Below, in pieces: positions 5,193 through 53,656 of a stretch of 64,000 nt of DNA. A program made the translations under genes and the position numbers. Location: positions 186,001-250,000 of IMG/VR virus record IMGVR_UViG_3300033182_000980; one strand, written 5' to 3'. The notes below the pieces were generated by a model that ran no database searches, was not told the DNA's origin, and saw nothing but the letters and a program-made list of their open reading frames with translations. The stretch's first letter is position 1; each line of letters starts with the position of its first letter.

Positions 5193-5202
5193 GGTGTAAT
5201 CC

Positions 5203-5916
5203 TTAGAAGCGAATGTAGAGTCCTGTGCCATCTTCAAAGCGATCTTTGAGATCCTCTGCATAGACATCGTTGAACTCTTTAACAACCTTTACGCTACGAC
5301 CATGAGTACGAATGAACTCCATGTCATAAAGGTCAAGACCATTAAGGGTGATACGCACTCTGTTCACAGCACCCCTGTGCTTAGGCTTTGGGAACACGAG
5401 TGTAACACCATTAGGCTCATTGATGAGTTGCTTGAGTCCAATCATCATCTGTAGCTTACGACCACCGCCGAGCTGATTAACGATGGTAGCCGCAATCGAA
5501 TTGGCTTGTCTCTCAAGACGAGCAACCTTGACACCTCTAGCTGTGGCAGAGATACCTTTGGAAGCTAACCAGTTCATCACTGCCGTGAAATCACCTCGAT
5601 AATCATTAACTTCCATTAACTCTGCGAAGCCCATGTTTTGATTTGCTTTGGAAATCAAAGCCTTTTTAATCCCTTCTTTTCTGACCTCAACAGATTGGTC
5701 TGGCAATCTACTCTTAGACCACTCTTTCCAACTGACTGGCTTAATTGAACCATCAAATCCTACAAAAGCAAAAAATAAAGTTTCACCTCTTGAAAGGTTT
5801 ACTTTTCTCCCACTTCTTGATGCAATCGTCTTGTATTCAAATGCAGACGCTTGTCTCTCAAGACGAGCAATTCTCATCTCAAGATTTCTAATAATCTCAC
5901 TAGCTGATCTTCTCAT
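5203..5916 (-). CDS. Leader-bearing two-domain protein
   Basis: N-terminal MRRSASEIIRNLEMRIARLERQA and internal VARLERQA. The C-terminal domain (TIVNQLGG...VRITL..LDLYDMEF...VY...L...FE..TGL) resembles a recurring phage domain of unknown function. Confidence 0.75.
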   Translation of the reverse strand: MRRSASEIIRNLEMRIARLERQASAFEYKTIASRSGRKVNLSRGETLFFAFVGFDGSIKPVSWKEWSKSRLPDQSVEVRKEGIKKALISKANQNMGFAELMEVNDYRGDFTAVMNWLASKGISATARGVKVARLERQANSIAATIVNQLGGGRKLQMMIGLKQLINEPNGVTLVFPKPKHRGAVNRVRITLNGLDLYDMEFIRTHGRSVKVVKEFNDVYAEDLKDRFEDGTGLYIRF

Positions 5917-5966
5917 AGGTCATTCTCCATTGGTTAAGGGTTAAAGAGATCACCTATGGAGAACCT

Positions 5967-9281: not shown

Positions 9282-9608
9282 TCACATACGAGCTTCAAAT
9301 TCCCTACTGCTTTTTCTATATACTTTACCCACCGACATAGTGTCCATTGATTCGTCACTCCATGAATCAAGAGATACTTTAACGGCCTTATTTCCTTTTA
9401 AGGGTACTTCTAAGACGATCTTCCCCCCTCTTGACATTTCAAAAGGTTCAAGGTCAGTATTTACATTTTCGTTAGTTAAAATCGACACTTGATTCTTAAA
9501 AACCCTCATTAGATATGAGTCTTTGAGGTCAACTTTGCTCGCTTGACGCTCTAATCGAGCGATACGAGCTTCAAGATTTCTGATTATTTCTGACGCTGAT
9601 CTTCTCAT
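9282..9608 (-). CDS. Leader-bearing hypothetical protein
   Basis: MRRSASEIIRNLEARIARLERQA; AAGGA RBS. Confidence 0.75.
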   Translation of the reverse strand: MRRSASEIIRNLEARIARLERQASKVDLKDSYLMRVFKNQVSILTNENVNTDLEPFEMSRGGKIVLEVPLKGNKAVKVSLDSWSDESMDTMSVGKVYRKSSREFEARM

Positions 9609-10165: not shown

Positions 10166-10648
10166 TTACCCAATCCACCTTGTCAGATCGCCCCAGTCTA
10201 ACCAGACTCTCTTTTTCTTAGGGTCAATTTTGATGCCGAGAGCTGAACCTATACTAGTACGATCTCGCTCATCAAAGTTGAATGGGATGCTTATGGTGTT
10301 TGGTCTACCCCCTCCACCAAACGATGGGAAACCTCTTAGTGCCATAAAGTGTTGAGCACCAGCTTGCTTAAACCATTCATCTGCACCAGTGTGAGTTTGT
10401 ACATACCCATAAACAGTCACTGTTCTGCCATTTTTTGGGTTTTCAAAAGTGACATCCACATTATTAAGGCTTTTTACTTCAACATCGACAACTTCAAATA
10501 GACCTGCATCGGTCTTGTAAAGGAGTCTCTCTAACTCTTGGAGGGTTAGTCTATTGTCCTTAAAGATGTCAAAGATACCTGCTTGCTTTTCAAGCTGTGT
10601 AACTCTTGACTCAAGGTCATGGATGATTTCTGATGCAGTTCTTTTCAT
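10166..10648 (-). CDS. Leader-bearing hypothetical protein
   Basis: MKRTASEIIHDLESRVTQLEKQA. Confidence 0.75.
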   Translation of the reverse strand: MKRTASEIIHDLESRVTQLEKQAGIFDIFKDNRLTLQELERLLYKTDAGLFEVVDVEVKSLNNVDVTFENPKNGRTVTVYGYVQTHTGADEWFKQAGAQHFMALRGFPSFGGGGRPNTISIPFNFDERDRTSIGSALGIKIDPKKKRVWLDWGDLTRWIG

Positions 10649-10691: not shown

Positions 10692-10706
10692 ATAAATAGG
10701 TTATTA
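10692..10706 (-). promoter_or_regulatory. Class-L motif over a stop codon, with anti-SD hairpin (10659-10684)
   Basis: TAATAACCTATTTAT; CCATAGGT/ACCTATGG 8-bp stem. Confidence 0.6.
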
Positions 10707-11372
10707 AAATCTGACCCTATACTTTTTGAGGGTCGGGGTCATACCTTTTTCAACGCTCTTAGCAATGGATACAACCTCTTCAGCTAATCTTACATTCTCT
10801 TCTGTCGAGTCGAGTCTCTTTACAAGACTGAGGCTAAGTTCGCTCCCTCCCTTAGACCAGTCATTTAGACGGTCTTGGAAATGATTTTTTAGTTCCACAT
10901 AAAGAGGATCGGGATCATACCCCGTAGCCCCTTGTGTGAATAACTCTATATTCATGGTTAGAGGAGAGTCTTCTTCTTCTCGCAAGTGTAGGAAAAACTG
11001 AGTGTCTTGCGATTGGAAGTGAAGCAGAGTTATCTCATCTTCATCAAGAATGTCATAGTATTGGTAGGGAACATCGCCAAGTTCAATCAACTCTATGACA
11101 GATTTCTCAACTTTGATGGGTGCAACTAAAGAGAATGTCCCTTGAGCTGACATCATCTTGTTATTTTGTTTGAGCTTGAAGTCAGTTATTTGAAACTGAA
11201 CTGTCCCATCAAACATATCTTGAAGCTCACCCTCTAACTCAGAGGACATTTCATCTTGAGTGAGCTTGGAAGGAACTTTGAAGTCATCAATGATGTAGTT
11301 TCTGCTCGCTTGTTTTTCAAGACGAGCGAGCCTACGCTCAAGACCTCGAATGATTTCTGATGCTTTTTTCAT
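10704..11372 (-). CDS. Leader-bearing acidic hypothetical protein
   Basis: MKKASEIIRGLERRLARLEKQA. Confidence 0.75.
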   Translation of the reverse strand: MKKASEIIRGLERRLARLEKQASRNYIIDDFKVPSKLTQDEMSSELEGELQDMFDGTVQFQITDFKLKQNNKMMSAQGTFSLVAPIKVEKSVIELIELGDVPYQYYDILDEDEITLLHFQSQDTQFFLHLREEEDSPLTMNIELFTQGATGYDPDPLYVELKNHFQDRLNDWSKGGSELSLSLVKRLDSTEENVRLAEEVVSIAKSVEKGMTPTLKKYRVRF

Positions 11373-11857: not shown

Positions 11858-12790
11858 TTATAGGGGCAAGTACCGAGTTCTAGCGTATCGGGCAGACTTG
11901 CTTCCAAAACCAAACCATGACTTGAGTTTACTCACTCCAGTGTTCAAAGCGTCCATCACACCTCGACTTATACTTCTAAATCCACCTAAAAGTTTGTCTT
12001 TAAGCTCTGTAATCTTAACCCCTGTTCGCTGAATAAAGGGTAAGAAATACTTAAAGAAAAAGTTGGCAACTTTAGAGGTAGCCCACCCTAAAACTCTTAG
12101 GGCTAGATAAGCACAAAGCATGATACCCATGACTTTAACTGATCCAAGAGTAATAGCTCCCCACAAAGTCTTGGCAACAGCTCCTCCAGAAGCAAAGACA
12201 GCGATAGCGGCTGCACAAGTATAAACCACGAAAAACATTAGAATCGACCCTAGAGCGTTAAACTCATCTCCAGTATAGTATCGTTTCCCCCCCAAATTGA
12301 GGTGAGCACCCTCAATCGGAGTTCCCTTTTGCTGGAATAATTGTTCTTCGATTTGTTTATGACCCTTATAGAGCCAAGCATAAAAACCTATGGGGTCGTC
12401 CGAGTTATGTCGCTTAATACATTCATCAATGTAGGCATACTTAGCCTTGATTGAGTTTCTGCGATCAATCTCCTCTTTGATCTTTTGGATCTGAGGATTC
12501 TTATCATTGATGATCTTGTCCATGTTCTTATAGGCATTCATAATATCTCTTGGTGAGTTAATGCCAGCCTTCTTCATAGCAATCACAAAACTGCTTGGGA
12601 CATCCTCAAGTTCATTATCAAGCCCTTCTGCAAGCCCAACGAAAGCTGTTTCGATAGTAGCTTTCTCGACCTTATCTGCTTGGTTTGAAGTCTTGATGAC
12701 TCGACCAAGATTGTTGATGTAGGCTTGTTTTTCAAGGCTTGCGACTCGGATCTCAAGATCACGAATATATTGGTGTGCTGTCTTTCTCAT
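11858..12790 (-). CDS. Leader-bearing protein with a C-terminal hydrophobic hairpin (start corrected to MRKTAH)
   Basis: GGAGA RBS before the ATG at 12790; MRKTAHQYIRDLEIRVASLEKQA; two long hydrophobic Gly/Ala-rich segments. Confidence 0.7.
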   Translation of the reverse strand: MRKTAHQYIRDLEIRVASLEKQAYINNLGRVIKTSNQADKVEKATIETAFVGLAEGLDNELEDVPSSFVIAMKKAGINSPRDIMNAYKNMDKIINDKNPQIQKIKEEIDRRNSIKAKYAYIDECIKRHNSDDPIGFYAWLYKGHKQIEEQLFQQKGTPIEGAHLNLGGKRYYTGDEFNALGSILMFFVVYTCAAAIAVFASGGAVAKTLWGAITLGSVKVMGIMLCAYLALRVLGWATSKVANFFFKYFLPFIQRTGVKITELKDKLLGGFRSISRGVMDALNTGVSKLKSWFGFGSKSARYARTRYLPL

Positions 12791-12839
12791 GTTCTTTTCT
12801 CCATAGGTAGAATTAAGGTAAGGACACATATCTCAGAAT

Positions 12840-14203: not shown

Positions 14204-14665
14204 CTCTAGCTCTTCTGGTATATCGAACCTTACTGTCCTTCTATACTTATCCCGATAACCAATCTTAGCTTGGACTTGGTGCTTACAGGGGATCATCTTT
14301 CCTGTTTTGATCTTGTGTATGATTAGCTCGTAATCCATGATCTCACCAGGTAATGCCATGATGATATATGGGTTAGCTATATCTGTCGGGAGGTCTTTAG
14401 GATCGACTACAAGTACAACGGCTGTTGGTGTAGAAATCCAACCTTTGATCTGGATCGTTTGACTAGTAGCGAGTATTGAGGTGTATGGTTTTAAGTCGAT
14501 CACAGATCCGTTCGACCCGAATGATTTAAGGACAGCAACAGACCCTTTTTTATTCCAGTAAGAGGGGATCGTGGGAGTGTTAGGTTCTCTTTTCCACCAC
14601 AAGAACAGCTCTTCTGGTTCTCTGATGCAAGCTACTAGGCTAGATACTTTTGTGATTAAATCCAT
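14201..14665 (-). CDS. Hypothetical protein
   Basis: 154-aa ORF coupled (TAATG) to the upstream gene. Confidence 0.6.
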   Translation of the reverse strand: MDLITKVSSLVACIREPEELFLWWKREPNTPTIPSYWNKKGSVAVLKSFGSNGSVIDLKPYTSILATSQTIQIKGWISTPTAVVLVVDPKDLPTDIANPYIIMALPGEIMDYELIIHKIKTGKMIPCKHQVQAKIGYRDKYRRTVRFDIPEELE

Positions 14666-16512
14666 TATCTGATCCTCTTAGGGTGTTTGTACTTGGTCCT
14701 CCAAGACGGCTGTATCTGCTCCATTGCTTCAATGCCAACTTTACTCATTATGTCGGGTTCAAAGACACTACCCAAAGAGATGTTAGTTTTGGCTAACACT
14801 TTGTGTTTAGGGGGGTGTGCATAACCATTTGATTTATCCACAACTAGGTAGGTGTGAGTAGAGTTCATCTCCTCATTTTGATAGAGGAAGATGATGACAT
14901 TCTTGAGAACCTTTATTGTCATCCCTAAAGCAGAAGCAATAGCTCTCGATGCTTCAATAATCGCATCTCCATTGCCTTCTGGAGTAGTCGGGATTGTTGG
15001 TTCGGGAGTCTGATCCACGACTTCTGTTTGAGGAGGCTCTTGGGTAGGCTCTGTAATAACATTCATTGTCCTCCAACGAGGTTTTAGGCTACTCATACGC
15101 TCAAACCCTACACAGACATCTAAGTTATCATTAGAGATGTTTGAGAGGTTCACATTAAGGTTTGGCTTAGACTTCGTTTTAGGAGCGAACAGATTACCTG
15201 TGGCATAGTCTATGAACATATAAGCGTGTGTCGAACCTACAGCTTGATTAGTGTAGACGAACAATCCGTACTTACGACCTTTTTTAAATAGGAGTCCAAG
15301 TCTACTTGCCAATGACTCGGAGATCCTAATCATCTCTTGTTTACTTGGGAGAGTTTCTTCAACTTGCGTGGCTCCGGCTTCTTCAGTTTCACTTGGCACG
15401 AAAATATCTGTAAAGTTTGAGCCGTCGGGTTGATACTCTACGCCGTCAACAATGATACTATTAAACGCTTCTAAGGACTTAGGGTGTAGCTTCCCTACTG
15501 CTTTGTACGATAGAGCTTCACAGAAATGCTCTTCAACATCAGTCATAGCATATTTAGTAGGAAAGATACCAGTTTGTGCCTTGATGTATTCTTTAATGTA
15601 TTTCTCTCTATAAACACCGATCTCACTACCGTCGGGCAATACAAGATAGACTCCATGAGATGTTATCCTAGAAATCTTTACAGGGACACCATCACTAGCT
15701 TTGACCCCTATAGATGTTTTTGAACGCTTCTTTTTGGCATATAGATTGATGTCTTTACCGATCCATTCAGATAGACGAATACGCTGTGCATAATGGCATT
15801 TAAGATCATATCTTCTCCACAGTCTCTTTTTATCTTCGGAGAGGATTTTCTGATAGTATCTATGCCCTATCTCATGGATAAAAGTCTTAATGAACTCTGC
15901 TTTATCCCTATCCATGTACTTCATGGTGATCTCGTCTTTTACCGAGTTGTACCATGCGTACCAGCTTGACCTTCCTAGCTTCTCGACTAGTACGACATCA
16001 CCGTAGAGTGCTTGAGGAAAGTTGGGAGCTAGTGAGTTCGTGCATCGAGACAGGGCTTGAGTGCAAGCCTCTTTCATCTCTTCGACCTTATCTTCACCGA
16101 GATTGATTGGGTTCTTTAGAGTAAAAGGACCGACATCGACTTCGTTTTCCCCTTCTTCTCTTAAAGGGTATCGAAGCAGAGCAAGCATATCATCAATATG
16201 TTTCTTCCTAGCTCTAAGCCAATCTTGAGGGCTGTATCTTCTTGAACGAGGGAGCTTAAGTTTATTCTTAATCGCCCGAACTCTCTTCGACTTATTTTCG
16301 GGGAAATTGATCTTATGGAATAAGAAATCGGCTAAGTGTACTGCAAAGACTAATCCTTTACTTTGCACGAATAATGAAGGGTTGAACCTTGCATCTTCAA
16401 GGACATCAATGGCTTCTAACACAGGGGTGTTGTAGTTAGTGTTTCTTATGAGTCCTTGCCATGTACCTATTTCACATCTGCTTAAGTGACTGTAGCTTGC
16501 GTACCTTCTCAT
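14665..16512 (-). CDS. Zincin metallopeptidase-domain protein with two C-terminal repeats
   Basis: FIHEIGH followed by PTKYA...EEHFCE; two ~75-aa repeats (..STH(A/T)Y(M/L)..D...G....PK); ATG at 16512 with AGGTGG RBS. Confidence 0.75.
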   Translation of the reverse strand: MRRYASYSHLSRCEIGTWQGLIRNTNYNTPVLEAIDVLEDARFNPSLFVQSKGLVFAVHLADFLFHKINFPENKSKRVRAIKNKLKLPRSRRYSPQDWLRARKKHIDDMLALLRYPLREEGENEVDVGPFTLKNPINLGEDKVEEMKEACTQALSRCTNSLAPNFPQALYGDVVLVEKLGRSSWYAWYNSVKDEITMKYMDRDKAEFIKTFIHEIGHRYYQKILSEDKKRLWRRYDLKCHYAQRIRLSEWIGKDINLYAKKKRSKTSIGVKASDGVPVKISRITSHGVYLVLPDGSEIGVYREKYIKEYIKAQTGIFPTKYAMTDVEEHFCEALSYKAVGKLHPKSLEAFNSIIVDGVEYQPDGSNFTDIFVPSETEEAGATQVEETLPSKQEMIRISESLASRLGLLFKKGRKYGLFVYTNQAVGSTHAYMFIDYATGNLFAPKTKSKPNLNVNLSNISNDNLDVCVGFERMSSLKPRWRTMNVITEPTQEPPQTEVVDQTPEPTIPTTPEGNGDAIIEASRAIASALGMTIKVLKNVIIFLYQNEEMNSTHTYLVVDKSNGYAHPPKHKVLAKTNISLGSVFEPDIMSKVGIEAMEQIQPSWRTKYKHPKRIR

Positions 16513-16517
16513 CTTAT

Positions 16518-17249
16518 TCACCACCTAATTTTGAACTTAACTTTGATCTGCATATCTTCATTGATGACCTGTTCGGGAGGTCGGGTGTCATAAGCATAGT
16601 TAAGCTCATTGACTAGGGAGAATACTTTGTTGAGAGTGAACTCAAGAGATCCTGTGGTCAAGATACGATAGTCATCTGGGTCTGTGAACAAAGGTTGAAA
16701 GTAAGTGATCAATTGACCCTTAACCTTGTTTTCCCATTCCTTGCCTATACGAATATAGGAAGAGGCTCTAGCATTGATATTTCCTGTCTCAAGAGCTGAG
16801 ATACGCTCATAGTCCGACATCCCACCTATACCTATAGCTAAGTGGTCTTTGAACATGGTGAACCTCAACCCACATCCAGTGAGCTGTCTCAAGGTCAGTA
16901 GTTGGAACTCGGCTGTCTGTACTTGAGTGAATACCTCTGTACCGACATGATTCCACCACATAGCTGTCCATCTAAGGTGAGCATAGGACTGATCTTGGAA
17001 AGGCTCACCTTCGCTTTCGCCATAGGACATTGACCCAATGATGAGTGAGTGGTGTATGTCTTTGATATAGTCAGCTCTTAAACCAAGCTGATACTGAAAG
17101 ACATTTACATTCCCTCTCTGTACAGATAAACCGATTTCATTAGATCCATGTAGACCTTGCTTATCTCCACCACGATCTGACTCGATGTTCACTACTTGCC
17201 CCCAAGCGAGGTATGGGAGCATTACAATAAAGATAAGCAAGGCTCTCAT
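16518..17249 (-). CDS. DUF481/YdiY-like outer-membrane beta-barrel protein
   Basis: Signal peptide, alternating beta strands, G.GLRF and YFQP..TDP.DYRI...NYAYDTRPP patterns, terminal aromatic residue (KFKIRW). Confidence 0.8.
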   Translation of the reverse strand: MRALLIFIVMLPYLAWGQVVNIESDRGGDKQGLHGSNEIGLSVQRGNVNVFQYQLGLRADYIKDIHHSLIIGSMSYGESEGEPFQDQSYAHLRWTAMWWNHVGTEVFTQVQTAEFQLLTLRQLTGCGLRFTMFKDHLAIGIGGMSDYERISALETGNINARASSYIRIGKEWENKVKGQLITYFQPLFTDPDDYRILTTGSLEFTLNKVFSLVNELNYAYDTRPPEQVINEDMQIKVKFKIRW

Positions 17250-17722
17250 TACAGGATCTCTACAGGATAGTTTTCAAGTAGGAGTCTTGTAAGAGGACAA
17301 CGCTTCTTCTTTGCGTGAGTCTCTAAATAAGGCACATGATTTCTGCTCTTTGAGTGGAGGCTATGAGCTACTTCACCCGAATAGAGAATGAGGTCTGTGA
17401 TTGCCTTGTGTGAAGCTCTTGCACAGCTCGGCTTAAACCCTAGAGGTCCAGCTACCATACGCTTTGGCTTCTGATTGAGTAAGCAAGCACCACCAAGAGC
17501 TTTACTCGCATTACAGTTCGATCCTTGGCATCGGGTACTGAAATAAGTACCCGCTTCTGGATGCTTGCTCTCAACAAAGCGAGCGAGGGCATTAACCTTT
17601 TTCTCTAGCTTACGAAGAGCGACTTCAACATCATTCTGGACAGCTTTGGTGAAACCATAGTTCCCACTTGCCGCAGTCTTATTCATGTAGGCGTTAGCAA
17701 CTCTTTTAATGCTGTTATTCAT
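17249..17722 (-). CDS. Hypothetical protein with two internal repeats, KTA site (start corrected)
   Basis: MNNSIKRVANAYMNKTAASG; repeats YGFTK...C and LGFKP...CPL..LL..YP. Confidence 0.65.
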   Translation of the reverse strand: MNNSIKRVANAYMNKTAASGNYGFTKAVQNDVEVALRKLEKKVNALARFVESKHPEAGTYFSTRCQGSNCNASKALGGACLLNQKPKRMVAGPLGFKPSCARASHKAITDLILYSGEVAHSLHSKSRNHVPYLETHAKKKRCPLTRLLLENYPVEIL

Positions 17723-17723
17723 C

Positions 17724-19304
17724 TCACCACTCCAAATCGTCAATGATGTCATCGTGATGAGCTAGACGGCTTAGTGCGTCTAAGCCACCACTAGAAGGCT
17801 TCTTTGCAGGTCCAAGACTATCAAGTGCGGATAATCCACCACCAGATCCCCCTGTGTTCTTTTGAACACGAGCTGGATCAATTCCTTTGGAAGTCATTGC
17901 ACCTTCGTACTTAGCCCACTCTTTCCCAAAGTTTTTTTTCTGGGCTTCATAGGAATCTTTTACTTCTTTTGCACTATTGTGCTTGTGGCTTTTGACCCTA
18001 GACTCTTTGTCGAAGTCAGCCGTGATGCCCATATCATCAATGATGTCATCTGCAAACTTAAAGGTATAACCTTCCTCTTCGCCATGTGGGTGATCATCAC
18101 GATAACCACGATAACGAGCTACATCGTTCATAGCGGAGTGTGCGTGAGAAATCTTATCTTCAACCCAGTCGTCAAGGTCGTCCATGCCGATGTCATCAAC
18201 GATGAAATCCGCCATGTCGCTGATCTCTCGTAGGTTCTGTCGGCTCATGTATGATCCGGACTCTTCATGGTCTTTAGCCATACGGCTAGAACCTTTAGGG
18301 ACAGAGCCAATAAGGTCTTCAATGTTTTTTAAGGCATATTCTAAAGTCGGGAGAACTTCATTTTCCATGACTCTATAAACATAACGCTCATTGCCTTCGT
18401 CAGCCAATCCACGATCAATCATAGAGGTGATCTCATGGTTTGCTTCTTTAATTGCCTCTTGGAAACTTTCAAAAGCTCCAGACACCTCTTCATGGTATGG
18501 AGCAAACAAAGGATGTCCATCTACATCTACGAAAAGTTCACCCCAACTGTTTTGGCTTTTAATCAGAGCTGATTCTACAGCATTCATATCTTCAACAGCA
18601 TCGGAGAGATCATCAAGAGTTATTTTACTTAATAATCTGTCAATATGAGATACAGAATTCACTAGTCGTTTCTTTAAAGATGAACTGATCTCACGATCTG
18701 ATAGATCACCTGCTATACGACCAAGACCAAGGTCATCAATGATCTCGTAATGTGCAGTTTTACCCGCATCTTCTACGATCTCTTCTTTGTCCTCTTTGAT
18801 GTCCTCAAGTTTCTCTTCAAGCTCTTTTTGCTCGGAGTCTAACTCTTGGAAGTCCTCGGAACTCATCGCCTTAGCTCTGTTCTTAACGACATCCTTGTTG
18901 ATCTCGGTCTGCTCATCAAAGGTTTCAGCGGCATCGGGGTTGTCTTTCTTCCACTGCTCAAACTCTTTCTTACCTTTAGGTCCAGAATGAAAACGAGACT
19001 CTTTCCAGAAATCAGACATACGATCAAGACCGATGTCATCTACAATCTCGAAGCCCTCAAGCTCCTCGGCTTCAAAGTCATCCGAGAGAAAGTCAGCTTC
19101 AAAGTCATCTGCGATCACTTCATCTTTGACATTACCTGGACCACCTCTTAATGGCTCGATCCCCATATTTACTTGGACGACATTCTCACCCAAGAAATCA
19201 GCGGCGTTTCTCTCACCATAGTCGGGCTGTAGTCGAAGGGGTTGCTGTGGGTATCGAATCTCCATGTGCTTCTGTGCGATTTTTTTAGCTAGTCTTTTAA
19301 GCAT
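17724..19304 (-). CDS. Acidic, repeat-rich putative head core/scaffold-like protein
   Basis: Repeated [IV][IV]DD[ILM]G units next to KTA/RIA/RMA/KFA/RLA sites; SYMSRQNL...LDDWVEDKISHA domain. Confidence 0.5.
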   Translation of the reverse strand: MLKRLAKKIAQKHMEIRYPQQPLRLQPDYGERNAADFLGENVVQVNMGIEPLRGGPGNVKDEVIADDFEADFLSDDFEAEELEGFEIVDDIGLDRMSDFWKESRFHSGPKGKKEFEQWKKDNPDAAETFDEQTEINKDVVKNRAKAMSSEDFQELDSEQKELEEKLEDIKEDKEEIVEDAGKTAHYEIIDDLGLGRIAGDLSDREISSSLKKRLVNSVSHIDRLLSKITLDDLSDAVEDMNAVESALIKSQNSWGELFVDVDGHPLFAPYHEEVSGAFESFQEAIKEANHEITSMIDRGLADEGNERYVYRVMENEVLPTLEYALKNIEDLIGSVPKGSSRMAKDHEESGSYMSRQNLREISDMADFIVDDIGMDDLDDWVEDKISHAHSAMNDVARYRGYRDDHPHGEEEGYTFKFADDIIDDMGITADFDKESRVKSHKHNSAKEVKDSYEAQKKNFGKEWAKYEGAMTSKGIDPARVQKNTGGSGGGLSALDSLGPAKKPSSGGLDALSRLAHHDDIIDDLEW

Positions 19305-19342: not shown

Positions 19343-19357
19343 ATAGATAAACTATTA
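19343..19357 (-). promoter_or_regulatory. Class-L motif over a stop codon
   Basis: TAATAGTTTATCTAT, 39 nt upstream of 19304. Confidence 0.55.
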
Positions 19358-21262
19358 AATGTTAGGTAGTCCTACGAGGTACTTAACTACATCGCCTTTA
19401 CCTTCTAGGTTTCGGGTGTAGCACTTCTTGTCATCATCCCATTCGAGAGGTTTGTTGAGGACTGCTCTTACTTGAGTCTCATCTTGGATGTGATTGACTC
19501 CGAGTCGCTTCTTTAAGAGTCGGGCGAACCTTGCATCAACCTCTGCATACCAACCTCTCTTTAAGAGGAGTTCTGCACCTTTCATCAACATAGCGTTCCT
19601 ACCCTCGCTTGTGCCATCAGACCCAATGAGTCCGATCTTCTTCCCGAAGCGTGTAGTGCTATAACTAACGAAAGCGTCTATCTCATCATCTCCAGCAACA
19701 TCAACGACCCAGAAGATGTCGTAGTTTCTCATAAGCTCGGACTTGGAGCTTATGTGCTTTCCTACTTTGGAGTAGGATAGATCATAAATGACCCACAGTT
19801 GTTCCTGTTGATCTTGGGAGAATTGCTTAGGGGGTGCTTCAACCCACTTTTTACGGTCAAGGTGAACAAGAGCGATACGCTGTGCCATCCTTTGATGTGC
19901 AAATGATCTGAACACGAGCTTGTATGCTTCGCCTACAGCTTTAGAGTATTTGTCTTTAGCTTTACGCTTAAGTGAGAGGAAAAAACCAATGGGTCTGACA
20001 TAGTTTAAGAAGTCTGCCCTTCTTCTTTCTTGTCTGCCGATGTCTTGACCCACAAGAGCCTTAAACAATAAGTTCTTATCTTGGACAGTAAGTTTTCTGT
20101 GCTCTCCGTGGTAATCGAACTTTGACATAATCTCACGAACAGCATCCCTAAGATCAGTATAAAACTCAACATCATCTAAATGATGCTTTTCAAGATCAAG
20201 TCTCCTACCACTATCCTCTTGATTTTGCTTGAACTGAGGCGTTCTGATCTTCTTTGAGGGCAGTCCTGCTAGATTGCTTTGGTTTCTTAGTCTTGCATAA
20301 TCACTGAAGAAATCTTTTAGCTTTAATGAGATGTAAGACAGGATTGTTTGACCAGCGTGGGTCATCTCGTGAACCACAACCCTGTGGATATGCTTAACTA
20401 TATACCGTGCCTCTGGAATTATACCAGATCCATCTACAGCTTTTTCTGCATCACTAATAGGCATGAAGAAAGTGTTAGCTCCTGCTTGCCAATGTGGGTT
20501 TTCGTTTGAAACTTGTATCCTCACATTGATATGAGCAAGGCTCTCTATTTCGTCCTCAAGATTGTTGGCTCTCTCTATAACCCTTTCAAGCTGTTCGGTT
20601 AAGAAATCACTTGCGTCATCGGGTACGGTCTCAAGCAGACTCGTCATGCTTGACTTCATTTGATCCAACTCTTCTAACTTTGTTTGCTTGACCCTCTCTC
20701 TATGCTCTTCAAGAGACTGCTGATCGACATACCATTCATCAAGATAGATAGGGAACTGCACATATCTTACTTCGCCTTTTTTCATGGGCTTCAGCTTAAC
20801 TGTGATGAGCTTCTTAAATCCTTTAATCTTCTCCTTAACATTAGGGATCATTCTCTCGCCATAAGCAAGACGACCCTCCATAGATTCGAGGTTCTTCTCA
20901 ATCTGTTCCTCGATTAGTGCTTTAACAGCTTCCCTTCGCTCCGAGGACTTTACTCCAGAGAAGGCTTTCATCTTAAAATCTGAAAAGTAGCCATACCCAA
21001 AAAAGCCTCTCGACACCTCTCCGAACTCTTTGTATTTACTGTAGATGTCTCTTGTGCCTTTAGAGTCAGCGGCATCTCTTAGCTCATCAATCGCAGTTAA
21101 AAGAGGCTCATATCTTGGCTCTTCCGTAACTCTGAACTTTTTAAGCTCCCTAACCTTTCGGTTGAGGGCTTTGACATAGTTAGTCGCTACTTGTGAGATG
21201 ATATGCTCATACACATCTTGAGTGAGCATAGGGGGTGGCTTCATTAGTCCTGCATATTTCAT
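19355..21262 (-). CDS. HExxH metallopeptidase-like protein with a conserved C-terminal alpha/beta domain
   Basis: VVHEMTHAGQ...EFY; C-terminal ~165 aa paralogous to that of 21274..22512. Confidence 0.65.
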   Translation of the reverse strand: MKYAGLMKPPPMLTQDVYEHIISQVATNYVKALNRKVRELKKFRVTEEPRYEPLLTAIDELRDAADSKGTRDIYSKYKEFGEVSRGFFGYGYFSDFKMKAFSGVKSSERREAVKALIEEQIEKNLESMEGRLAYGERMIPNVKEKIKGFKKLITVKLKPMKKGEVRYVQFPIYLDEWYVDQQSLEEHRERVKQTKLEELDQMKSSMTSLLETVPDDASDFLTEQLERVIERANNLEDEIESLAHINVRIQVSNENPHWQAGANTFFMPISDAEKAVDGSGIIPEARYIVKHIHRVVVHEMTHAGQTILSYISLKLKDFFSDYARLRNQSNLAGLPSKKIRTPQFKQNQEDSGRRLDLEKHHLDDVEFYTDLRDAVREIMSKFDYHGEHRKLTVQDKNLLFKALVGQDIGRQERRRADFLNYVRPIGFFLSLKRKAKDKYSKAVGEAYKLVFRSFAHQRMAQRIALVHLDRKKWVEAPPKQFSQDQQEQLWVIYDLSYSKVGKHISSKSELMRNYDIFWVVDVAGDDEIDAFVSYSTTRFGKKIGLIGSDGTSEGRNAMLMKGAELLLKRGWYAEVDARFARLLKKRLGVNHIQDETQVRAVLNKPLEWDDDKKCYTRNLEGKGDVVKYLVGLPNI

Positions 21263-21273
21263 CTTATTTCTCC

Positions 21274-22512
21274 TTATAGAACGGGGCTACCGAATAATGC
21301 TTTGGTGTGTCTGCCGATAGATCCCAATGACCTACTGTAGTAGCCATCACCTTCAAGGATGATGTCTCCTTTACCACCCATAATAGCCATGATCGTATCT
21401 GGATTCTTTATGTTGTCTAACCCTCCCCTTCTTAGGATTTCTTCAACCTTGTCAGACGCTTCTGTGTAGTATCCTCTCTGTTTGAGGAGCTTGAGCATCT
21501 TAACTATGACTGCCTTTTTGGACTTCCTTGTTCCATCATGCCCCATAGCCGCGATCTTCTTACCGAATGGTGTGTCTTTCATGGCAATGAAGATGTCAAT
21601 ATCTGGATCATCATCGTTGTCAATGACCTCGAAGATCGGGTACTTTTTGATTAGCTCCTCTTTAGACCCTATGTGCTTGCCGATAGCTCCATAAGCAATG
21701 TCATATAGAGTCCAAAGATCTCCCTCTTGCTCGGAGTCGAATCGGTTATTCTTTGTCTCTAACCATTTATCCTTCTCCAAAACGACTCTAGCAAGTCTCT
21801 CTGCCATGCGTTCTCTGCGTAAGTCTTTCTTATGCTTCTCTTTACGAGATCGACCCTTAGCGACATCTTTATCCCTATTCTTGTGCTTGCCTTTACCAGA
21901 ACTGCCGACACCTGTACCATCGAACATTCCTTGTGCGTTAGGATCACGATACTTAGGGATCGAGGGTTCTTGGTTTTTCTTCTTTTTGCTTGCCATGATC
22001 TGGCGACCATTCTCACAGACCTCACGCTCAATCATAAGAGCGGGTCTGCGTACAAGATAGTTCGGCCATTTCTCGAACCACTTAGAGTAGAAATCATCTT
22101 CGGAGACTTCACGAGTGGTCTTGTCGGGGTTAGGCATATTGGGGTCAGCTACATGAACAACATAGCTTCCCTTTTCACCAGTCACATCAAAGATTAAGCT
22201 CGCATGACTCCAATCCCTACCTTCTGGATTCCAAGCGATGAGGACAGGCTTACCTTGATCAGTCCATGATTTTACTTGGGTGAGTGTAGCTGGTGTAGTG
22301 AGTGTAGCTCTGCAACCAAAGTATTGAGCACAGGCTAATACCTCTTCCCATCTCGCACCTTGCATGGGTTTCGCACCAATAACTTGATTGACTTGATCTT
22401 CGTTGCATTTAACCCCTACAGCATTGAGTGCCATACAGGTGGAGGTTGCAACGCAACTAAACTGTGACCGCTGTCGTATTGGGTTCACATCAGCTTTTGC
22501 TAATCTTCTCAT
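21274..22512 (-). CDS. C39-like cysteine peptidase with a conserved C-terminal alpha/beta domain
   Basis: RQRSQFSCVATS (Q...C), SHASL (H), VADPN (D). Confidence 0.75.
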   Translation of the reverse strand: MRRLAKADVNPIRQRSQFSCVATSTCMALNAVGVKCNEDQVNQVIGAKPMQGARWEEVLACAQYFGCRATLTTPATLTQVKSWTDQGKPVLIAWNPEGRDWSHASLIFDVTGEKGSYVVHVADPNMPNPDKTTREVSEDDFYSKWFEKWPNYLVRRPALMIEREVCENGRQIMASKKKKNQEPSIPKYRDPNAQGMFDGTGVGSSGKGKHKNRDKDVAKGRSRKEKHKKDLRRERMAERLARVVLEKDKWLETKNNRFDSEQEGDLWTLYDIAYGAIGKHIGSKEELIKKYPIFEVIDNDDDPDIDIFIAMKDTPFGKKIAAMGHDGTRKSKKAVIVKMLKLLKQRGYYTEASDKVEEILRRGGLDNIKNPDTIMAIMGGKGDIILEGDGYYSRSLGSIGRHTKALFGSPVL

Positions 22513-22513
22513 A

Positions 22514-22565
22514 ATAGGTAGCCCTTTCTATTGTTAGGAAAGAGCCACCTATAAAGAGATTACAA
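22514..22565 (-). promoter_or_regulatory. Class-L motif (22551-22565) plus 15-bp anti-SD hairpin
   Basis: ATAGGTGGCTCTTTC pairs with GAAAGGGCTACCTAT (two G-U pairs) just before the ATG at 22512. Confidence 0.72.
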
Positions 22566-22991
22566 ATCTATCACCACACAAAGGCCGGAGCTAGGGTGCT
22601 TTCTTTTAAGAGACTCCCATACCCTCATAGCCATGTCGCTAGTTGACCCCGACACGCTACATTTTTCGGGTATGATGACAAAGGGTTTCCTCACCCTCTT
22701 TGACCACCCCTCTATGAGCTTTTGGTAAATCTCTGACCCGACACCTTTGCCTTGGTACTCTTTACTTAGGCTGACTACATTGACTTCTAATATGCGTATG
22801 TCCTCACCGTCCATGACTTGAGGATACTCATAACTAATATCTATGAGATCGTCCGAGCATTGATAGGTATGTACGACCTCCATCATAGAGATGGAGTCGC
22901 CATAAGCCCTAGCAAGCCCTATGACTTCACCTTGGTCTTTAACCTCAACAAAGACGGAGGTTGATGTGGTCTTGGTGGAGAAATCGAGCAT
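22560..22991 (-). CDS. GNAT-family acetyltransferase
   Basis: V.LSKEYQGKGVGSEIY (motif A, QxxGxG) and S..AMRVWESL. Confidence 0.8.
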   Translation of the reverse strand: MLDFSTKTTSTSVFVEVKDQGEVIGLARAYGDSISMMEVVHTYQCSDDLIDISYEYPQVMDGEDIRILEVNVVSLSKEYQGKGVGSEIYQKLIEGWSKRVRKPFVIIPEKCSVSGSTSDMAMRVWESLKRKHPSSGLCVVIDL

Positions 22992-23746
22992 CAGCTTCTC
23001 TTAAACTTCGACTTGTTGAGATGAATCTCAATGTGACCTTTTTCTCCTATATTAATCGTATAGTCCTTATCGTAGCCAGATTTGAGTTTTTTAAATGCTG
23101 GGTACTTTGTGGTTAGGAGTTTTTTAAGGTCATTGGTTAGAGGACCAGCCCATTCGTCCCACCACCCCTCTTCATCCCAACCCTCTGGATCACAATCGGG
23201 ATCGTCCTCATCACAGTCATAGTACGCACCAACATAGTGGTCGAGTCTTTGTCTGTTCATAGGCTCTATCTCTAGGAACCAGGTGTTTCCATCGTCACTT
23301 AGACCCATACCTTTCATACGACCACCATTGGGGGTACTTGACCTGCTCAAGAAATAGTAGACCTCTTGAGCTGTCGGTAGTTGTTCTTCAACTGTAGGTC
23401 GAGATCTCGGTGCTGATCTAGTAGGTGTTCGTTGTCGAACAGGTCTTGGAGGCTCGTTAACCACACGAGGAGAGGGTTGTCTACCTGTTGGGTTAGACCT
23501 AAACGAGTCAGCCAAGTCAGATGCGTTGTTTCTGTGCATTACTTTTCTGATGTTTTTAAGATCTCGCTCACTAAGATCACCCCCGTCTTTGAGGGTCTGA
23601 AGGTATCCCCCAAGCTCAACGATCATTCTTGTGTTGTTTCGATTTTGGGACAGGAAGCCCCTAAGAGCTTCATAAGCCTCTGACTTAGTGGCGGCCTGTC
23701 TTTCGAGTCTGGCAACCCTCATTTCGAGGTTTCTTAAGATACTCAT
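22991..23746 (-). CDS. Leader-bearing multi-segment hypothetical protein
   Basis: MSILRNLEMRVARLERQA; Pro/Arg-rich linker; Asp/Trp-rich C-terminal patch. Confidence 0.7.
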   Translation of the reverse strand: MSILRNLEMRVARLERQAATKSEAYEALRGFLSQNRNNTRMIVELGGYLQTLKDGGDLSERDLKNIRKVMHRNNASDLADSFRSNPTGRQPSPRVVNEPPRPVRQRTPTRSAPRSRPTVEEQLPTAQEVYYFLSRSSTPNGGRMKGMGLSDDGNTWFLEIEPMNRQRLDHYVGAYYDCDEDDPDCDPEGWDEEGWWDEWAGPLTNDLKKLLTTKYPAFKKLKSGYDKDYTINIGEKGHIEIHLNKSKFKRS

Positions 23747-24441
23747 TATTGTTGCTCCAAGTCAGCAGAGTCTGTGTGGAGGATCGCTTTGAAAATAGAG
23801 TCCTCGTCATAATAGCCATCTCTGTCCTGTTTGATAGATCTACTAGGAACAGTAAGGTGGAATACAGTTCGCTCTGATTTCTCTCGGTCGTCAGCTCGGT
23901 CAATATACTCAAGCTCAACATTTAGTTTCACATAAGTACCATAGAACTCGACTTGATCTTCAACATCCACAGCAACATATTGCTTGCGATCATCTCCGTA
24001 AGACCCAAGCCATTCAAAGACTTGACTGTTTAAATAATCTCGTCCTCTACGACCTAGCTCAACGAGGGCTTGAGGGGTTTCTCTCCTAGCTGATTTCTCA
24101 AGTCGAGCAATGCGACCCTCTAGCTCATAGATGACATCAGATGCCCTACGAGTCCTAATGCCGCTGAGTCGATCTTCGAGGTCTTGCAGTTGTAGGGCAT
24201 CAAGATTGAGGCTTTGTTCTTGAGCTTCAAGTGCTTCAAGACGCTCTTGCTCTCGGATCAGAGGCTCAAAGTGCTGAATGTCAGCAATGAACTCTCTGAC
24301 CCTTCTGATTTCTTCTTCAAGGTCTTCGGTGTCAAGACTCTTGATATATCCGACATTAACTTTACCAGCATCGCCATCAAGTTGTTTGTATAGCTTGATG
24401 AGATTGTAGAGGTCGATTCTTTTACCCGCGTTTCTTCGCAT
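23746..24441 (-). CDS. Hypothetical protein with an internal leader copy
   Basis: MRRNAG start; internal RRASDVIYELEGRIARLEKSA separates two domains. Confidence 0.7.
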   Translation of the reverse strand: MRRNAGKRIDLYNLIKLYKQLDGDAGKVNVGYIKSLDTEDLEEEIRRVREFIADIQHFEPLIREQERLEALEAQEQSLNLDALQLQDLEDRLSGIRTRRASDVIYELEGRIARLEKSARRETPQALVELGRRGRDYLNSQVFEWLGSYGDDRKQYVAVDVEDQVEFYGTYVKLNVELEYIDRADDREKSERTVFHLTVPSRSIKQDRDGYYDEDSIFKAILHTDSADLEQQ

Positions 24442-25566: not shown

Positions 25567-25581
25567 ATAAATAAACTATTA
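25567..25581 (-). promoter_or_regulatory. Class-L motif over a stop codon
   Basis: TAATAGTTTATTTAT, 36 nt upstream of 25531. Confidence 0.6.
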
Positions 25582-26148
25582 CTTTAGCCACCGATACGCT
25601 GTGGCTTCGGAGACTCCGTATAAATCCATGACTTGCTTTACATTCAAACTATAATCGAAGTCATGGGGTTTGCTAGATTTTCTATTTTTGGGCCTCATCT
25701 TAACGCCATATTTTTTAAGCCTATTTCTAAGTGTCTTTGGGTCAACATCGTATTTTTTGCAGATGTCTTTAACCTTTATACTTGAGTCTTGATACATCCT
25801 TATTATGTGTTCCATATCTTCTTCAGGTATTTTTTCTAACGGTTGTTCATATCTTAATGGGACATTAAACTCGTGTATCATGTTATAAACATGGGGCTTA
25901 GATACCCTATGCTTTCTAGCTATCTCGGAGACACCCATACCTCTTTTATAGTCTAAGGCGATGTCAGCACCCTCAAACTTATATGCTTTTGAGGGTTTTA
26001 TTTGAACACCCTCTTCTCTTAGCCTATTGATGATCGTTAGATAACTCACACCATAAAGTTCACCTAGCTTGGTTGAGCTGATGTTATTCCGATAACTACG
26101 AACAATTTGATCTACTGGTAGATCTATATAGCCTCCAACTTTTTTCAT
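25579..26148 (-). CDS. Tandem helix-turn-helix DNA-binding protein (about four HTH units)
   Basis: STKLGELYGVSYLTIINRL; VSEIARKHRVSKPHVYNMI; VKDICKKYDVDPKTLRNRL; VKQVMDLYGVSEATAYRWL. Confidence 0.8.
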   Translation of the reverse strand: MKKVGGYIDLPVDQIVRSYRNNISSTKLGELYGVSYLTIINRLREEGVQIKPSKAYKFEGADIALDYKRGMGVSEIARKHRVSKPHVYNMIHEFNVPLRYEQPLEKIPEEDMEHIIRMYQDSSIKVKDICKKYDVDPKTLRNRLKKYGVKMRPKNRKSSKPHDFDYSLNVKQVMDLYGVSEATAYRWLK

Positions 26149-42630: not shown

Positions 42631-42650
42631 TTTTTATCCCCTTTATGTTA

Positions 42651-43478: not shown

Positions 43479-43481
43479 ATT

Positions 43482-49664: not shown

Positions 49665-49666
49665 TT

Positions 49667-52921: not shown

Positions 52922-52933
52922 CTTTCACACCCC

Positions 52934-53575: not shown

Positions 53576-53580
53576 ATTTT

Positions 53581-53633
53581 CCTCCATTTGAAGATATGGG
53601 GCTGATAATGGAGGGTTATTTAAGACTTACAAA
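53581..53633 (-). promoter_or_regulatory. Anti-SD hairpin (CCTCCATT/AATGGAGG) with a degenerate class-L-like motif upstream
   Basis: 8-bp inverted repeat 53581-53588/53607-53614 covers GGAGG. Confidence 0.45.
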
Positions 53634-53656
53634 TCTCCCACCCTCCTCACCTTAAT

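What the first reader, a model, noticed from the sequence alone, without database searches (positions are those of the whole stretch)
19355..22991. Adjacent peptidase + shared C-terminal domain fusions next to a GNAT: modular effector polyproteins
Seen: two neighbouring genes carry different N-terminal peptidases (HExxH zincin; C39-like Cys protease). Both have a leader-like linker (QRMAQRIA / ERMAERLA) and the same ~160-aa C-terminal domain (LW.+YD+.Y..+GKHI.SK.EL...FGKKI...G.DGT...RG(W/Y)Y.E...Y.R.L.G.G). A clear GNAT gene sits immediately upstream. Inference: the shared domain may be GNAT-like, and protease cleavage would release separate protein-modifying effectors, as proposed for phage polyvalent proteins.
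Basis: partly seen in the sequence, partly recalled or inferred. Interest (0 to 1): 0.6.

Follow-up and report, generated by a model that had tools for sequence, protein, structure and literature searches.

The report
Phage peptidase–GNAT fusion gene pair
Two neighbouring genes of a 376-kb aquatic phage each join a different protease to a copy of an unnamed acetyltransferase-fold domain that is common in uncultured phages. They look like small versions of the multi-enzyme "polyvalent" proteins of phages, but whether they are cut apart or carried in the virion is untested.

Summary
On the minus strand lie a 143-aa canonical GNAT (22560..22991), a 412-aa protein with a C39-like cysteine peptidase, and a 635-aa protein with an HExxH module. 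The last two share a ~180-aa C-terminal domain (38% identity, E 2e-29).

The shared domain has no Pfam, PHROG or NCBIfam match. It folds confidently (pLDDT 95) as a GNAT, with Z about 10.5 to NatC, NatD, RimI, GCN5 and AAC(2'). It defines a large phage family of 841 clusters. Most members are solo proteins of about 180 aa. Others sit inside giant proteins with topoisomerase IB, InPase, poly(A) polymerase, and homologues of two other genes of this locus.

In 25 related phage loci the C39 gene is constant. What follows its fixed end (GRQIMA[ST]) varies: nothing, either GNAT paralogue, other domains, or the zincin.

The "leader-like linker" is the first helix of the GNAT domain, not a copy of the genome's true leader.

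Best reading: modular polyvalent-type enzyme proteins. Self-cleavage, virion packaging and the acetylation target remain inferred.

In passing: about 31 proteins of this genome share a 23-residue N-terminal leader, reminiscent of T4's capsid-targeting sequence.

The parts
22560..22991 (-). P0003, a 143-aa stand-alone canonical GNAT. Motif A (QGKGVG) is at 22737..22754.
   Evidence: Pfam PF00583 22.3 bits against a cut-off of 20.7. Atlas neighbours are GNAT clusters at 0.95-0.96. Motif position. Homologue upstream of the C39 gene in L003, L004, L009-L011, L014, L022 and L033. Also embedded in the giant protein P0021.
21985..22512 (-). P0002 residues 1-176: C39-like papain-fold cysteine peptidase. 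Cys20 is at 22453..22455 and His103 at 22204..22206. The domain ends in the invariant tail GRQIMAS.
   Evidence: Pfam PF13529. Q14, C20, H103 and D123 invariant. Weak profile match to the endoisopeptidase PeiR that aligns the Cys and His. Boundary.
21820..21984 (-). P0002 residues 177-231: Lys/Arg/Gly-rich linker with a conserved core (PKYRDPNAQGMFDGTGVGSS...).
   Evidence: The same linker precedes the type-2 GNAT domain behind a zincin (P0008) and behind the 'middle' domain (P0005). It is unique in this genome.
21277..21819 (-). P0002 residues 232-412: shared GNAT-fold domain, paralogue type 2. Helix alpha-0 (MAERLARVVLEKDKW) is at 21763..21807. The invariant Glu on beta-5 is at 21460..21462.
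   Evidence: AF2 pLDDT 95.3. Foldseek and VIA-align hit only GNATs. Family of 841 clusters. No Pfam, PHROG or NCBIfam match.
19901..21262 (-). P0001 residues 1-454: HExxH module, a putative zincin. HEMTH is at 20357..20371 and the candidate third ligand E366 at 20165..20167. The N-terminal half is long helices.
   Evidence: H298, E299, H302 and E366 invariant in 22 homologues. AF2 pLDDT 86 shows a sheet, then the HExxH helix, then a Glu helix. No significant fold or family match.
19358..19900 (-). P0001 residues 455-635: shared GNAT-fold domain, paralogue type 1. Helix alpha-0 (MAQRIALVHLDRKKW) is at 19844..19888.
   Evidence: 38% identity to the P0002 domain, E 2e-29. Keeps all family-invariant residues. 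In relatives, type 1 also occurs behind C39 (L009, L021).
17724..19304 (-). 526-aa acidic protein with four [DE][IV][IV]DD[ILM]G repeats, Gly-Gly motifs and the N-terminal motif RLAKKIAQKHM. A homologue lies directly downstream of the C39 gene in most related loci.
14665..16524 (-). P0004, 619 aa: a second HExxH (HEIGH) protein of the locus with two repeated C-terminal segments. It is homologous to a segment of the giant protein P0023 that directly precedes a copy of the shared GNAT domain.
   Evidence: Weak Pfam MPTase-PolyVal match, E 0.22. 30% identity over 282 aa, E 3e-23, to P0023.
22991..24441 (-). Two leader-bearing genes directly upstream (22991..23746 and 23746..24441). They belong to the genome-wide family of about 31 leader proteins.
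   Evidence: Leader HMM E 6.5e-9 and 9.5e-13.

Best explanation
These are two modular phage enzyme proteins of the polyvalent-protein kind.

Shown:
- Each joins a catalytically intact-looking peptidase to a paralogous copy of a phage-specific, previously unannotated GNAT-fold domain. One peptidase is a C39-like Cys/His enzyme. The other is an HExxH metalloenzyme.
- That GNAT domain is a mobile module. It occurs solo, behind either peptidase, behind other domains, and inside giant multi-enzyme proteins.
- In this phage lineage the C39 gene is the constant element. Whatever follows its fixed C-terminal tail is exchangeable cargo.

Inferred:
- The GNAT domains use an acyl-CoA to acylate an amine, most likely on a protein.
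- Peptidase and GNAT work as independent 'beads' rather than as one coupled machine.
- The fusion serves co-expression or co-delivery, and the peptidase may cut the cargo free at the flexible junction, as papain-like leader proteases and polyvalent-protein peptidases are proposed to do.
- Delivery with the virion is possible but has no direct support.
For: Fold and domains:
- GNAT fold: AF2 pLDDT 95.3, pTM 0.89, topology b1-a1-a2-b2-b3-b4-a3-b5-a4-b6-b7.
- Foldseek top hits are all GNATs. VIA-align gives Z 10-10.7 with 130-144 aligned residues to NatC, NatD, RimI, AAC(2') and GCN5.
- The conserved residues of the 65-sequence family include Y43, G47 and E120 (on strand beta-5), Y161 and R163 (strands). 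Their placement at the usual GNAT substrate cleft is my inference.
- The catalytic residues of both peptidases are invariant.

Family spread:
- 841 clusters. 81 of the top 150 are solo proteins.

Polyvalent context:
- The domain is embedded with TopoIB, InPase, PolyA_pol and 2H domains.
- P0021 also holds a P0003-like GNAT. P0023 holds a P0004-like zincin directly before the domain.
- One relative fuses C39, a middle domain, the zincin and the GNAT domain in a single 991-aa ORF.

Module exchange:
- Both paralogue types occur behind both peptidases.
- At least nine C39 architectures diverge right after GRQ[ILV]MA[ST].
- P0002 has a 55-residue basic and Gly-rich low-complexity linker.

Precedent: Iyer et al. 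2017 describe GNATs and releasing peptidases in polyvalent proteins (PMC5512222).
Against: - No cleavage, packaging or activity data exist.
- The b4-a3 loop reads G-x-D-G-x4-K, not the canonical Q/R-x-x-G-x-G/A. Acyl-CoA binding is therefore assumed from the fold.
- The C39 domain is unusually conserved (82-95% identity). It always sits before the same acidic repeat protein. That looks more like a housekeeping role in phage development than an arms-race effector.
- The genes are not next to portal, MuF or head genes. The nearest recognised structural gene is a Baseplate_J gene about 37 kb away.
- The zincin assignment rests on motifs and predicted topology only.
- The giant relatives scanned show no Pfam peptidase domain.
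Confidence: 0.55

Rival explanations
1. Phage-protein maturation enzymes. The peptidases remove N-terminal leaders or short terminal tags from the phage's own proteins, and the attached GNAT acetylates the newly exposed N-terminus. Candidate substrates are the ~31 leader proteins, or the acidic repeat protein that always follows the C39 gene.
For: - C39 peptidases classically remove amphipathic leader peptides (established knowledge).
- The genome has 31 ORFs with a near-identical 23-residue leader, and related phages have 10-18.
- Leader genes flank the locus.
- The C39 gene is highly conserved and always sits next to the p526-like protein, which carries Gly-Gly motifs.
- Many of the closest structures are N-terminal acetyltransferases (NatC, NatD, RimI, Ard1, Naa50).
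- A tag-like motif [RK][VIL]A..[YHF][MLI] is eight-fold enriched. It sits at protein termini and at the peptidase/GNAT junctions.
Against: - The GNAT cargo is optional. Many relatives have C39 and leader genes but no GNAT domain.
- A complete 316-kb relative has C39 plus the p526-like gene but only two weak leader-like matches.
- The leaders have no Gly-Gly site.
- The structural neighbours are tied with non-NAT GNATs.
Confidence: 0.15
2. Coupled two-step attack on one host protein. The GNAT domain acetylates a host target such as an RNA polymerase or translation component, and the attached peptidase then cleaves it. Both halves act while still joined.
For: - Precedent: the phiKMV-like phage GNAT Rac acetylates the RNAP alpha subunit, which leads to its cleavage (cited in PMC7824862).
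- A hydrolase followed by this GNAT domain recurs with four unrelated hydrolases: C39, two zincin families, and an esterase-annotated protein.
Against: - Free swapping of the two GNAT paralogues between peptidases argues against a co-adapted pair.
- So does the frequent solo occurrence of every module.
- No target is known.
Confidence: 0.15
3. Cell-envelope enzymes used at entry or lysis. The C39-like domain acts as an endoisopeptidase on wall peptides and the zincin as a wall or outer-membrane protease.
For: - The best solved-structure sequence match of the C39 profile is the endoisopeptidase PeiR (E 0.1).
- The locus encodes a DUF481 outer-membrane-type protein with a signal peptide.
Against: - The PeiR match is not significant.
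- P0001 and P0002 have no evident signal peptide or membrane segment (read by eye).
- A GNAT domain needs cytoplasmic acyl-CoA.
Confidence: 0.05
4. The shared domain is a non-catalytic GNAT-fold binding or scaffold module. In that case the fusions are simply peptidases with a targeting domain.
For: - The canonical acetyl-CoA motif A is absent.
- No sequence model for GNATs detects the domain.
Against: - Residues that are invariant or nearly so across a 26%-identity family include a Glu on strand beta-5. I infer they line the usual catalytic cleft.
- The conserved G-x-D-G loop lies where GNATs bind pyrophosphate.
Confidence: 0.1

Closest known systems
Polyvalent proteins of phages and conjugative elements (Iyer, Burroughs, Anand, de Souza, Aravind 2017; PMC5512222)
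   Same: - Several unrelated catalytic domains, including peptidases and GNATs, sit in one polypeptide.
- Domains are shuffled freely and have solo versions.
- The peptidase is proposed to release the other domains.
- The shared GNAT domain here is embedded in giant proteins with InPase, a Pfam family that Iyer et al. describe in polyvalent proteins. Those giants also carry homologues of two neighbouring genes.
   Different: - These have only two domains and are 412 and 635 aa long.
- The peptidases are a C39-like enzyme and an unclassified HExxH module, not the MPTase family.
- The GNAT family has no Pfam model. No match was found in the phage record collection apart from uncultured huge phages.
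- There is no link to MuF, portal or ART domains.
- Packaging is untested.
Polymorphic-toxin-style architecture (constant N-terminal module, releasing peptidase, exchangeable C-terminal cassette); from my own knowledge of Zhang et al. 2012
   Same: The N-terminal C39 domain is constant (82-95% identity). There is a sharp boundary, after which the C-terminal cargo differs between close relatives.
   Different: No secretion domain, no immunity gene and no recognised toxin domain. The elements are phage genes, not bacterial loci.
GNAT superfamily, especially protein N-terminal acetyltransferases (RimI, NatC/Naa30, NatD/Naa40, Naa50) and GCN5
   Same: Same fold and strand order, Z about 10. An invariant Glu on strand beta-5, which I read as lying in the catalytic cleft.
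   Different: 5-13% identity. Not detected by any GNAT sequence model. The pyrophosphate loop is G-x-D-G-x4-K. There is an extra N-terminal helix alpha-0.
Peptidase family C39 and C39-like (bacteriocin leader peptidases; Pfam PF03412 and PF13529)
   Same: Pfam match above the cut-off. Gln, Cys, His and Asp are conserved in the usual order.
   Different: Not fused to an ABC transporter. No double-glycine substrate has been identified. The domain is phage-encoded with variable C-terminal cargo.
T4 internal proteins with a capsid-targeting sequence (PMC3012670)
   Same: This comparison applies to the leader family noticed in passing. Many otherwise unrelated small proteins share only a short conserved N-terminal sequence.
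   Different: The leader here is 23 residues long, is present on about 31 proteins, and has a different sequence. No T4-type prohead protease or gp23 was found. P0001 and P0002 do not carry it.

Membership tests
GNAT superfamily (shared C-terminal domain) | Mixed alpha/beta GNAT fold with the b4/b5 splay | tested here: met
   AF2 pLDDT 95.3. All top Foldseek hits are GNATs. Z 10-10.7 over 130-144 residues.
GNAT superfamily (shared C-terminal domain) | Motif A, Q/R-x-x-G-x-G/A, at the b4-a3 junction | tested here: not met
   The family consensus there is G-x-D-G-x4-K. Only the central Gly is kept.
GNAT superfamily (shared C-terminal domain) | Match to a GNAT sequence model | tested here: not met
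   No match in Pfam, PHROGs or NCBIfam. hhalign against P0003 gives a probability of 0.2%.
GNAT superfamily (shared C-terminal domain) | Binds acyl-CoA and transfers the acyl group | not testable with these tools
   Needs biochemistry or a cofactor-aware model.
GNAT superfamily (P0003) | Pfam model above the cut-off, and motif A | tested here: met
   PF00583 22.3 bits against a cut-off of 20.7. QGKGVG is present. Atlas GNAT neighbours.
Peptidase C39-like (PF13529) | Sequence model above the curated cut-off | tested here: met
   25.3 bits against 24 for P0002. Relatives reach up to 34.5 bits.
Peptidase C39-like (PF13529) | Conserved catalytic Cys and His, with Gln and Asp | tested here: met
   Q14, C20, H103 and D123 are invariant in 9 sequences. 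The Cys and His align with those of PeiR.
Peptidase C39 (bacteriocin-processing) | Cleaves a double-glycine leader; fused to or partnered with an ABC exporter | tested here: not met
   No ABC domain in the protein. None was seen among the 10 locus neighbours scanned. The genome's leaders lack Gly-Gly.
Zincin metallopeptidases (P0001 N-terminal module) | HExxH on a helix, plus a downstream third ligand | tested here: met
   H298, E299, H302 and E366 are invariant. HEMTH lies in predicted helix 285-312 and E366 in helix 364-388, after a three-strand sheet.
Zincin metallopeptidases (P0001 N-terminal module) | Significant fold or sequence match to a known zincin family | tested here: inconclusive
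   - Foldseek: no hit at E <= 0.001.
- VIA wide search: dominated by a helical hairpin.
- Only weak leads to Zn_peptidase, MPTase-PolyVal, M78, SprT and BSP.
- The 454-residue model was too long to search as a single domain.
Polyvalent proteins (Iyer et al. 2017) | Two or more unrelated effector-type domains in one phage or plasmid polypeptide, with combinatorial architectures | tested here: met
Polyvalent proteins (Iyer et al. 2017) | Packaged in the virion or transferred into the host | not testable with these tools
   No proteome exists. No RNA run holds the locus. No portal, MuF or head gene is adjacent.

The most novel reading that the evidence does not exclude
This lineage of huge aquatic phages runs a genome-wide tag-and-process system. 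Dozens of unrelated proteins carry a 23-residue N-terminal leader, or a short terminal tag of the form RVA..YM. The conserved C39 peptidase and its zincin neighbour are the processing enzymes. Their GNAT cargo caps the new N-termini. The 'linker' helix at the peptidase/GNAT junctions would then be a built-in copy of the tag.
Probability: 0.12. Interest if true: 0.8.

Novelty: new variant of a known kind. Interest (0 to 1): 0.5.

Why it matters
- It names a large phage protein family of 841 clusters at 50% identity. No sequence library recognises it, and it can now be annotated as GNAT-fold.
- It gives small, tractable two-domain versions of polyvalent proteins. The long-standing proposal of peptidase-mediated release can be tested on them with two point mutants.
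- It shows a phage locus with a constant peptidase and exchangeable cargo.
- It points to about 31 leader-tagged proteins as candidates for packaged or processed factors in an uncultured 376-kb phage.

Tried and rejected
- **Linker as a copy of the genome's leader.** An HMM of the leader finds 31 ORFs but neither linker among its top 60 hits. Rejected.
- **Internal translation start at the conserved Met of the linker.** There is no Shine-Dalgarno like the GGAG seen before true starts. Not supported.
- **C39 domain binding a leader peptide.** Complex prediction with P0002 1-176 and P0189 1-40 gave no verdict, score 0.00. This is evidence neither for nor against.
- **Classifying the HExxH module by structure.** Foldseek pdb, VIA wide and the Atlas search were all inconclusive. 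A profile search against PDB sequences and Pfam on all 22 homologues gave only chance-level hits.
- **Sequence relation between P0003 and the shared domain.** None.
- **PDB sequence search with the domain profile.** Only chance enolase hits.
- **Cultured or annotated phages with the domain.** blastn and tblastn of the phage collection found only unannotated huge-phage records.
- **Prokaryote genomes.** The pattern scan found no relative. The wider alignment was too diverse to scan.
- **Known domains in the alternative C39 cargo and in leader proteins.** Pfam found none except one WGR domain.
- **T4-type prohead protease and gp23.** Not found, but the control genomes did not ring either, so this is uninformative.
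- **Promoter and terminator scan.** It gives no sign of separate transcription units inside the finding.
- **Read laying.** Not used, because only assembled contigs and no RNA runs were on offer.


Full report
**Where the window lies.** The window is bases 186001-250000 of a 375,691-bp virus record that CheckV rates complete. Near-identical words occur in seawater, marine, aquatic and wetland metagenomes, with no RNA run among them. The only similar records in the phage collection are unannotated 485-735-kb uncultured phages. The window also carries a Baseplate_J gene and four giant ORFs.

**Observation.** Three co-directional minus-strand ORFs fill the stated interval exactly:
- 22560..22991 (P0003, 143 aa)
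- 21274..22512 (P0002, 412 aa)
- 19355..21262 (P0001, 635 aa)

The gaps between them are 47 and 11 nt. No minus-strand terminator-like site lies between them. The last ~181 residues of P0001 and P0002 align at 38% identity, E 2e-29. They are the only two copies in the genome.

P0002 residues 8-124 match Peptidase_C39_2 above the curated cut-off. Relatives reach 34.5 bits. Gln14, Cys20, His103 and Asp123 are invariant.

P0001 has HEMTH. H298, E299, H302 and E366 are invariant across 22 homologues that fall to 25% identity.

P0003 passes the Pfam GNAT threshold and has a canonical QGKGVG. Its Atlas neighbours are GNAT clusters. So the description is correct.

**The shared domain.** Pfam, PHROGs and NCBIfam find nothing in it or in 64 relatives. 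A profile search of PDB sequences gives only chance hits.

An exhaustive profile search of 1.84 billion representatives finds 841 proteins at E <= 1e-3, and 447 at <= 1e-10. Of the best 150:
- 81 are solo proteins of about 175-230 aa
- 39 have an N-terminal extension
- 10 have a C-terminal extension
- 20 have both

With a 65-sequence alignment (26% mean column identity), AlphaFold2 gives pLDDT 95.3 and pTM 0.89. The strand and helix order is that of a GNAT, preceded by one extra helix. Every leading Foldseek match is a GNAT. VIA-align gives Z 10.0-10.7, rmsd 3.3-3.8 Å and 130-144 aligned residues to NatC, NatD, RimI, AAC(2'), Ard1, Naa50/60 and GCN5. In BFVD the nearest models are uncharacterised phage proteins of the same family. 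One of them is a 406-aa protein annotated as an esterase.

Residues conserved across the family include Y43, G47, E120 on beta-5, Y161, R163 and G177 (strands). I infer that they line the usual GNAT substrate cleft. The b4-a3 loop reads G-x-D-G-x4-K instead of Q/R-x-x-G-x-G/A, so cofactor binding is inferred from the fold, not from a motif. P0003 is unrelated to this domain in sequence.

**The 'leader-like linker'.** In the model the motif forms helix alpha-0 of the domain (residues 2-9, pLDDT about 73). Solo family members begin with their start Met 13-19 residues before the nearly invariant Trp. That is the position of the Met in RMAERLA and RMAQRIA. The simplest history is that a solo gene was fused behind each peptidase.

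No Shine-Dalgarno precedes the internal Met, so a separate start there is unlikely.

The motif is more than a relic, however. Peptidase-only relatives keep it as their last 10-14 residues. This holds for the C39-only proteins P0186 and P0187 and for the zincin-only proteins P0181 and P0174. It also fits a short pattern, [RK][VIL]A..[YHF][MLI], that occurs 20 times in the genome against 2.5 ± 1.7 in shuffles. Most occurrences lie near N- or C-termini, including the two proteins encoded just downstream. It does not match the genome's true 23-residue leader by HMM.

**Comparative anatomy.** Twenty-five IMG/VR loci, plus four metagenome and NCBI-assembly contigs fetched by exact protein look-up, carry the C39 gene. 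I mapped them with HMMs built here.

The C39 domain is 68-95% identical throughout. In most loci the next recognised gene is a homologue of the 526-aa acidic repeat protein. In the closer relatives that is followed by homologues of the 167-aa protein, a DUF481 protein, the 619-aa HEIGH protein and a 154-aa protein.

The zincin and the shared GNAT domain are optional inserts. What follows the invariant C39 tail GRQ[ILV]MA[ST] differs between loci:
- a stop codon after about 11 residues
- GNAT type 1
- GNAT type 2, with or without the basic linker
- a 170-aa 'middle' domain
- the middle domain plus a GNAT domain
- the middle domain plus the zincin plus a GNAT domain, in one 991-aa ORF
- the zincin directly
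- the C-terminal part of the acidic protein
- other unknown domains

Both GNAT paralogues occur behind both peptidases. This is the pattern of independent modules joined at a fixed boundary.

**Link to polyvalent proteins.** Giant relatives place the domain next to topoisomerase IB (four of the five scanned), InPase, the poly(A) polymerase head and 2H phosphoesterase domains. They lie in phage contigs of 100-295 kb.
- P0021 also contains a P0003-like GNAT (33% identity, E 4e-16).
- P0023 has a P0004-like HEIGH module directly before the domain (30% identity over 282 aa, E 3e-23).

Thus three separate genes of this locus appear as domains of single giant proteins elsewhere. Iyer et al. (PMC5512222) describe polyvalent proteins with GNATs, InPase and peptidases proposed to release the other domains. 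Those authors report two GNAT families. Whether this family is one of them could not be tested, but it has no Pfam model. A solo member sits in a T4-like contig next to an ATP-grasp gene.

**Mechanism.** I commit to modular polyvalent-type enzyme proteins, at confidence 0.55.
- Shown: the domains, their conservation and their mobility.
- Inferred: acyl-CoA-dependent amine acylation (probably of a protein), functional independence of peptidase and GNAT, and release by the peptidase at the junction.

Points against an arms-race effector role are the extreme conservation of C39 and its fixed partnership with the acidic repeat protein. These features suit a role in the phage's own development. The main rivals are therefore a maturation system and a coupled acetylate-then-cleave attack like that reported for Rac (PMC7824862). 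One relative with C39 but almost no canonical leader argues mildly against the maturation reading. The complex prediction for C39 with a leader gave no verdict and is not counted.

**Novelty.** The concept is known, and so are the GNAT and C39 superfamilies. Three things are new:
- recognition of a large unannotated GNAT-fold phage family
- its fusion behind two peptidases in adjacent genes
- the constant-peptidase, variable-cargo locus

Noticed in passing
Genome-wide. In the window: 4824..5285, 5203..5916, 9282..9608, 10166..10648, 10704..11372, 11858..12829, 22991..23746, 23746..24441 (all minus strand): - About 31 ORFs share a near-identical 23-residue N-terminal leader (consensus MRRSASEVIRNLEMRIARLERQA). 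After it the proteins are unrelated.
- A regex finds 26 matches against 0.5 expected by chance. The HMM finds 31 at E <= 5e-7.
- Related huge phages have 10-18 copies. One complete relative has almost none.
- This resembles T4's capsid-targeting sequence on diverse internal proteins (PMC3012670).
- Ten leader proteins scanned have no Pfam domain except one WGR.
   Followed up: partly
Upstream of the leader genes, for example window 5917..5945 (minus strand), and many sites outside the window: The leader genes share a conserved upstream DNA motif, CCCTTAACC-N3-6-ATGGAGAA-N5-7-ATGAGAAGA. It probably combines a phage promoter element and a ribosome-binding site. The 9-mer occurs 22 times against about 5 expected, and roughly half of the occurrences lie before leader genes.
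   Followed up: partly
Genome-wide. In the window: 17249..17752 and 17724..19304 (N-termini), and 19844..19888 (P0001): A second short motif, [RK][VIL]A..[YHF][MLI] (typically RVAsRYMk), occurs 20 times against 2.5 ± 1.7 in shuffles. It is usually 6-17 residues from the N-terminus or at the extreme C-terminus. It is also the tail of peptidase-only relatives. It may be a sorting or processing tag.
   Followed up: partly
window 17724..19304 (-): - A 526-aa very acidic protein with four [DE][IV][IV]DD[ILM]G repeats, Gly-Gly motifs and a C-terminal DDIIDDLEW.
- Its family keeps an N-terminal QPLRLQPDYGE box.
- It lies directly after the C39 gene in most related loci and is once fused to it, in L031.
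- It is a candidate substrate or partner of the C39 peptidase.
   Followed up: partly
window 16518..17249 (-): A phage-encoded DUF481 protein (E 2.4e-11) with a signal-peptide-like N-terminus, conserved in the closer related loci. By my reading it is an outer-membrane beta-barrel type, which would imply a Gram-negative host.
   Followed up: no
window 14665..16524 (-): A 619-aa protein with HEIGH (weak MPTase-PolyVal match, E 0.22) and two similar C-terminal segments of about 50 residues. Its HExxH part is homologous to a segment of the giant polyvalent-type protein P0023.
   Followed up: partly
window 23746..24441 (-) and 5203..5916 (-): Two proteins carry the leader in unusual places. The first has a full copy at residues 96-118, behind an MRRNA start. 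The second has a second partial copy at residues 131-138. These may be fusions of leader-gene cassettes.
   Followed up: no
window 37306..63406 (-): Five very large ORFs of 1774, 2060, 1084, 1902 and 1089 aa. Only the last has a Pfam match (Baseplate_J, E 2e-16). They are probably tail or baseplate proteins.
   Followed up: no
window 25579..26148 (-): A 189-aa protein that matches many helix-turn-helix families at several places along its length (HTH_23, E 1e-18).
   Followed up: no
L005:8001-9490 (T4-like metagenomic contig): A solo member of the shared GNAT-fold family lies among T4-type neck and tail genes. It is directly followed by an ATP-grasp (RimK-like) gene, and a DUF5661 gene lies nearby. 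DUF5661 also precedes the domain in the giant protein P0038.
   Followed up: no
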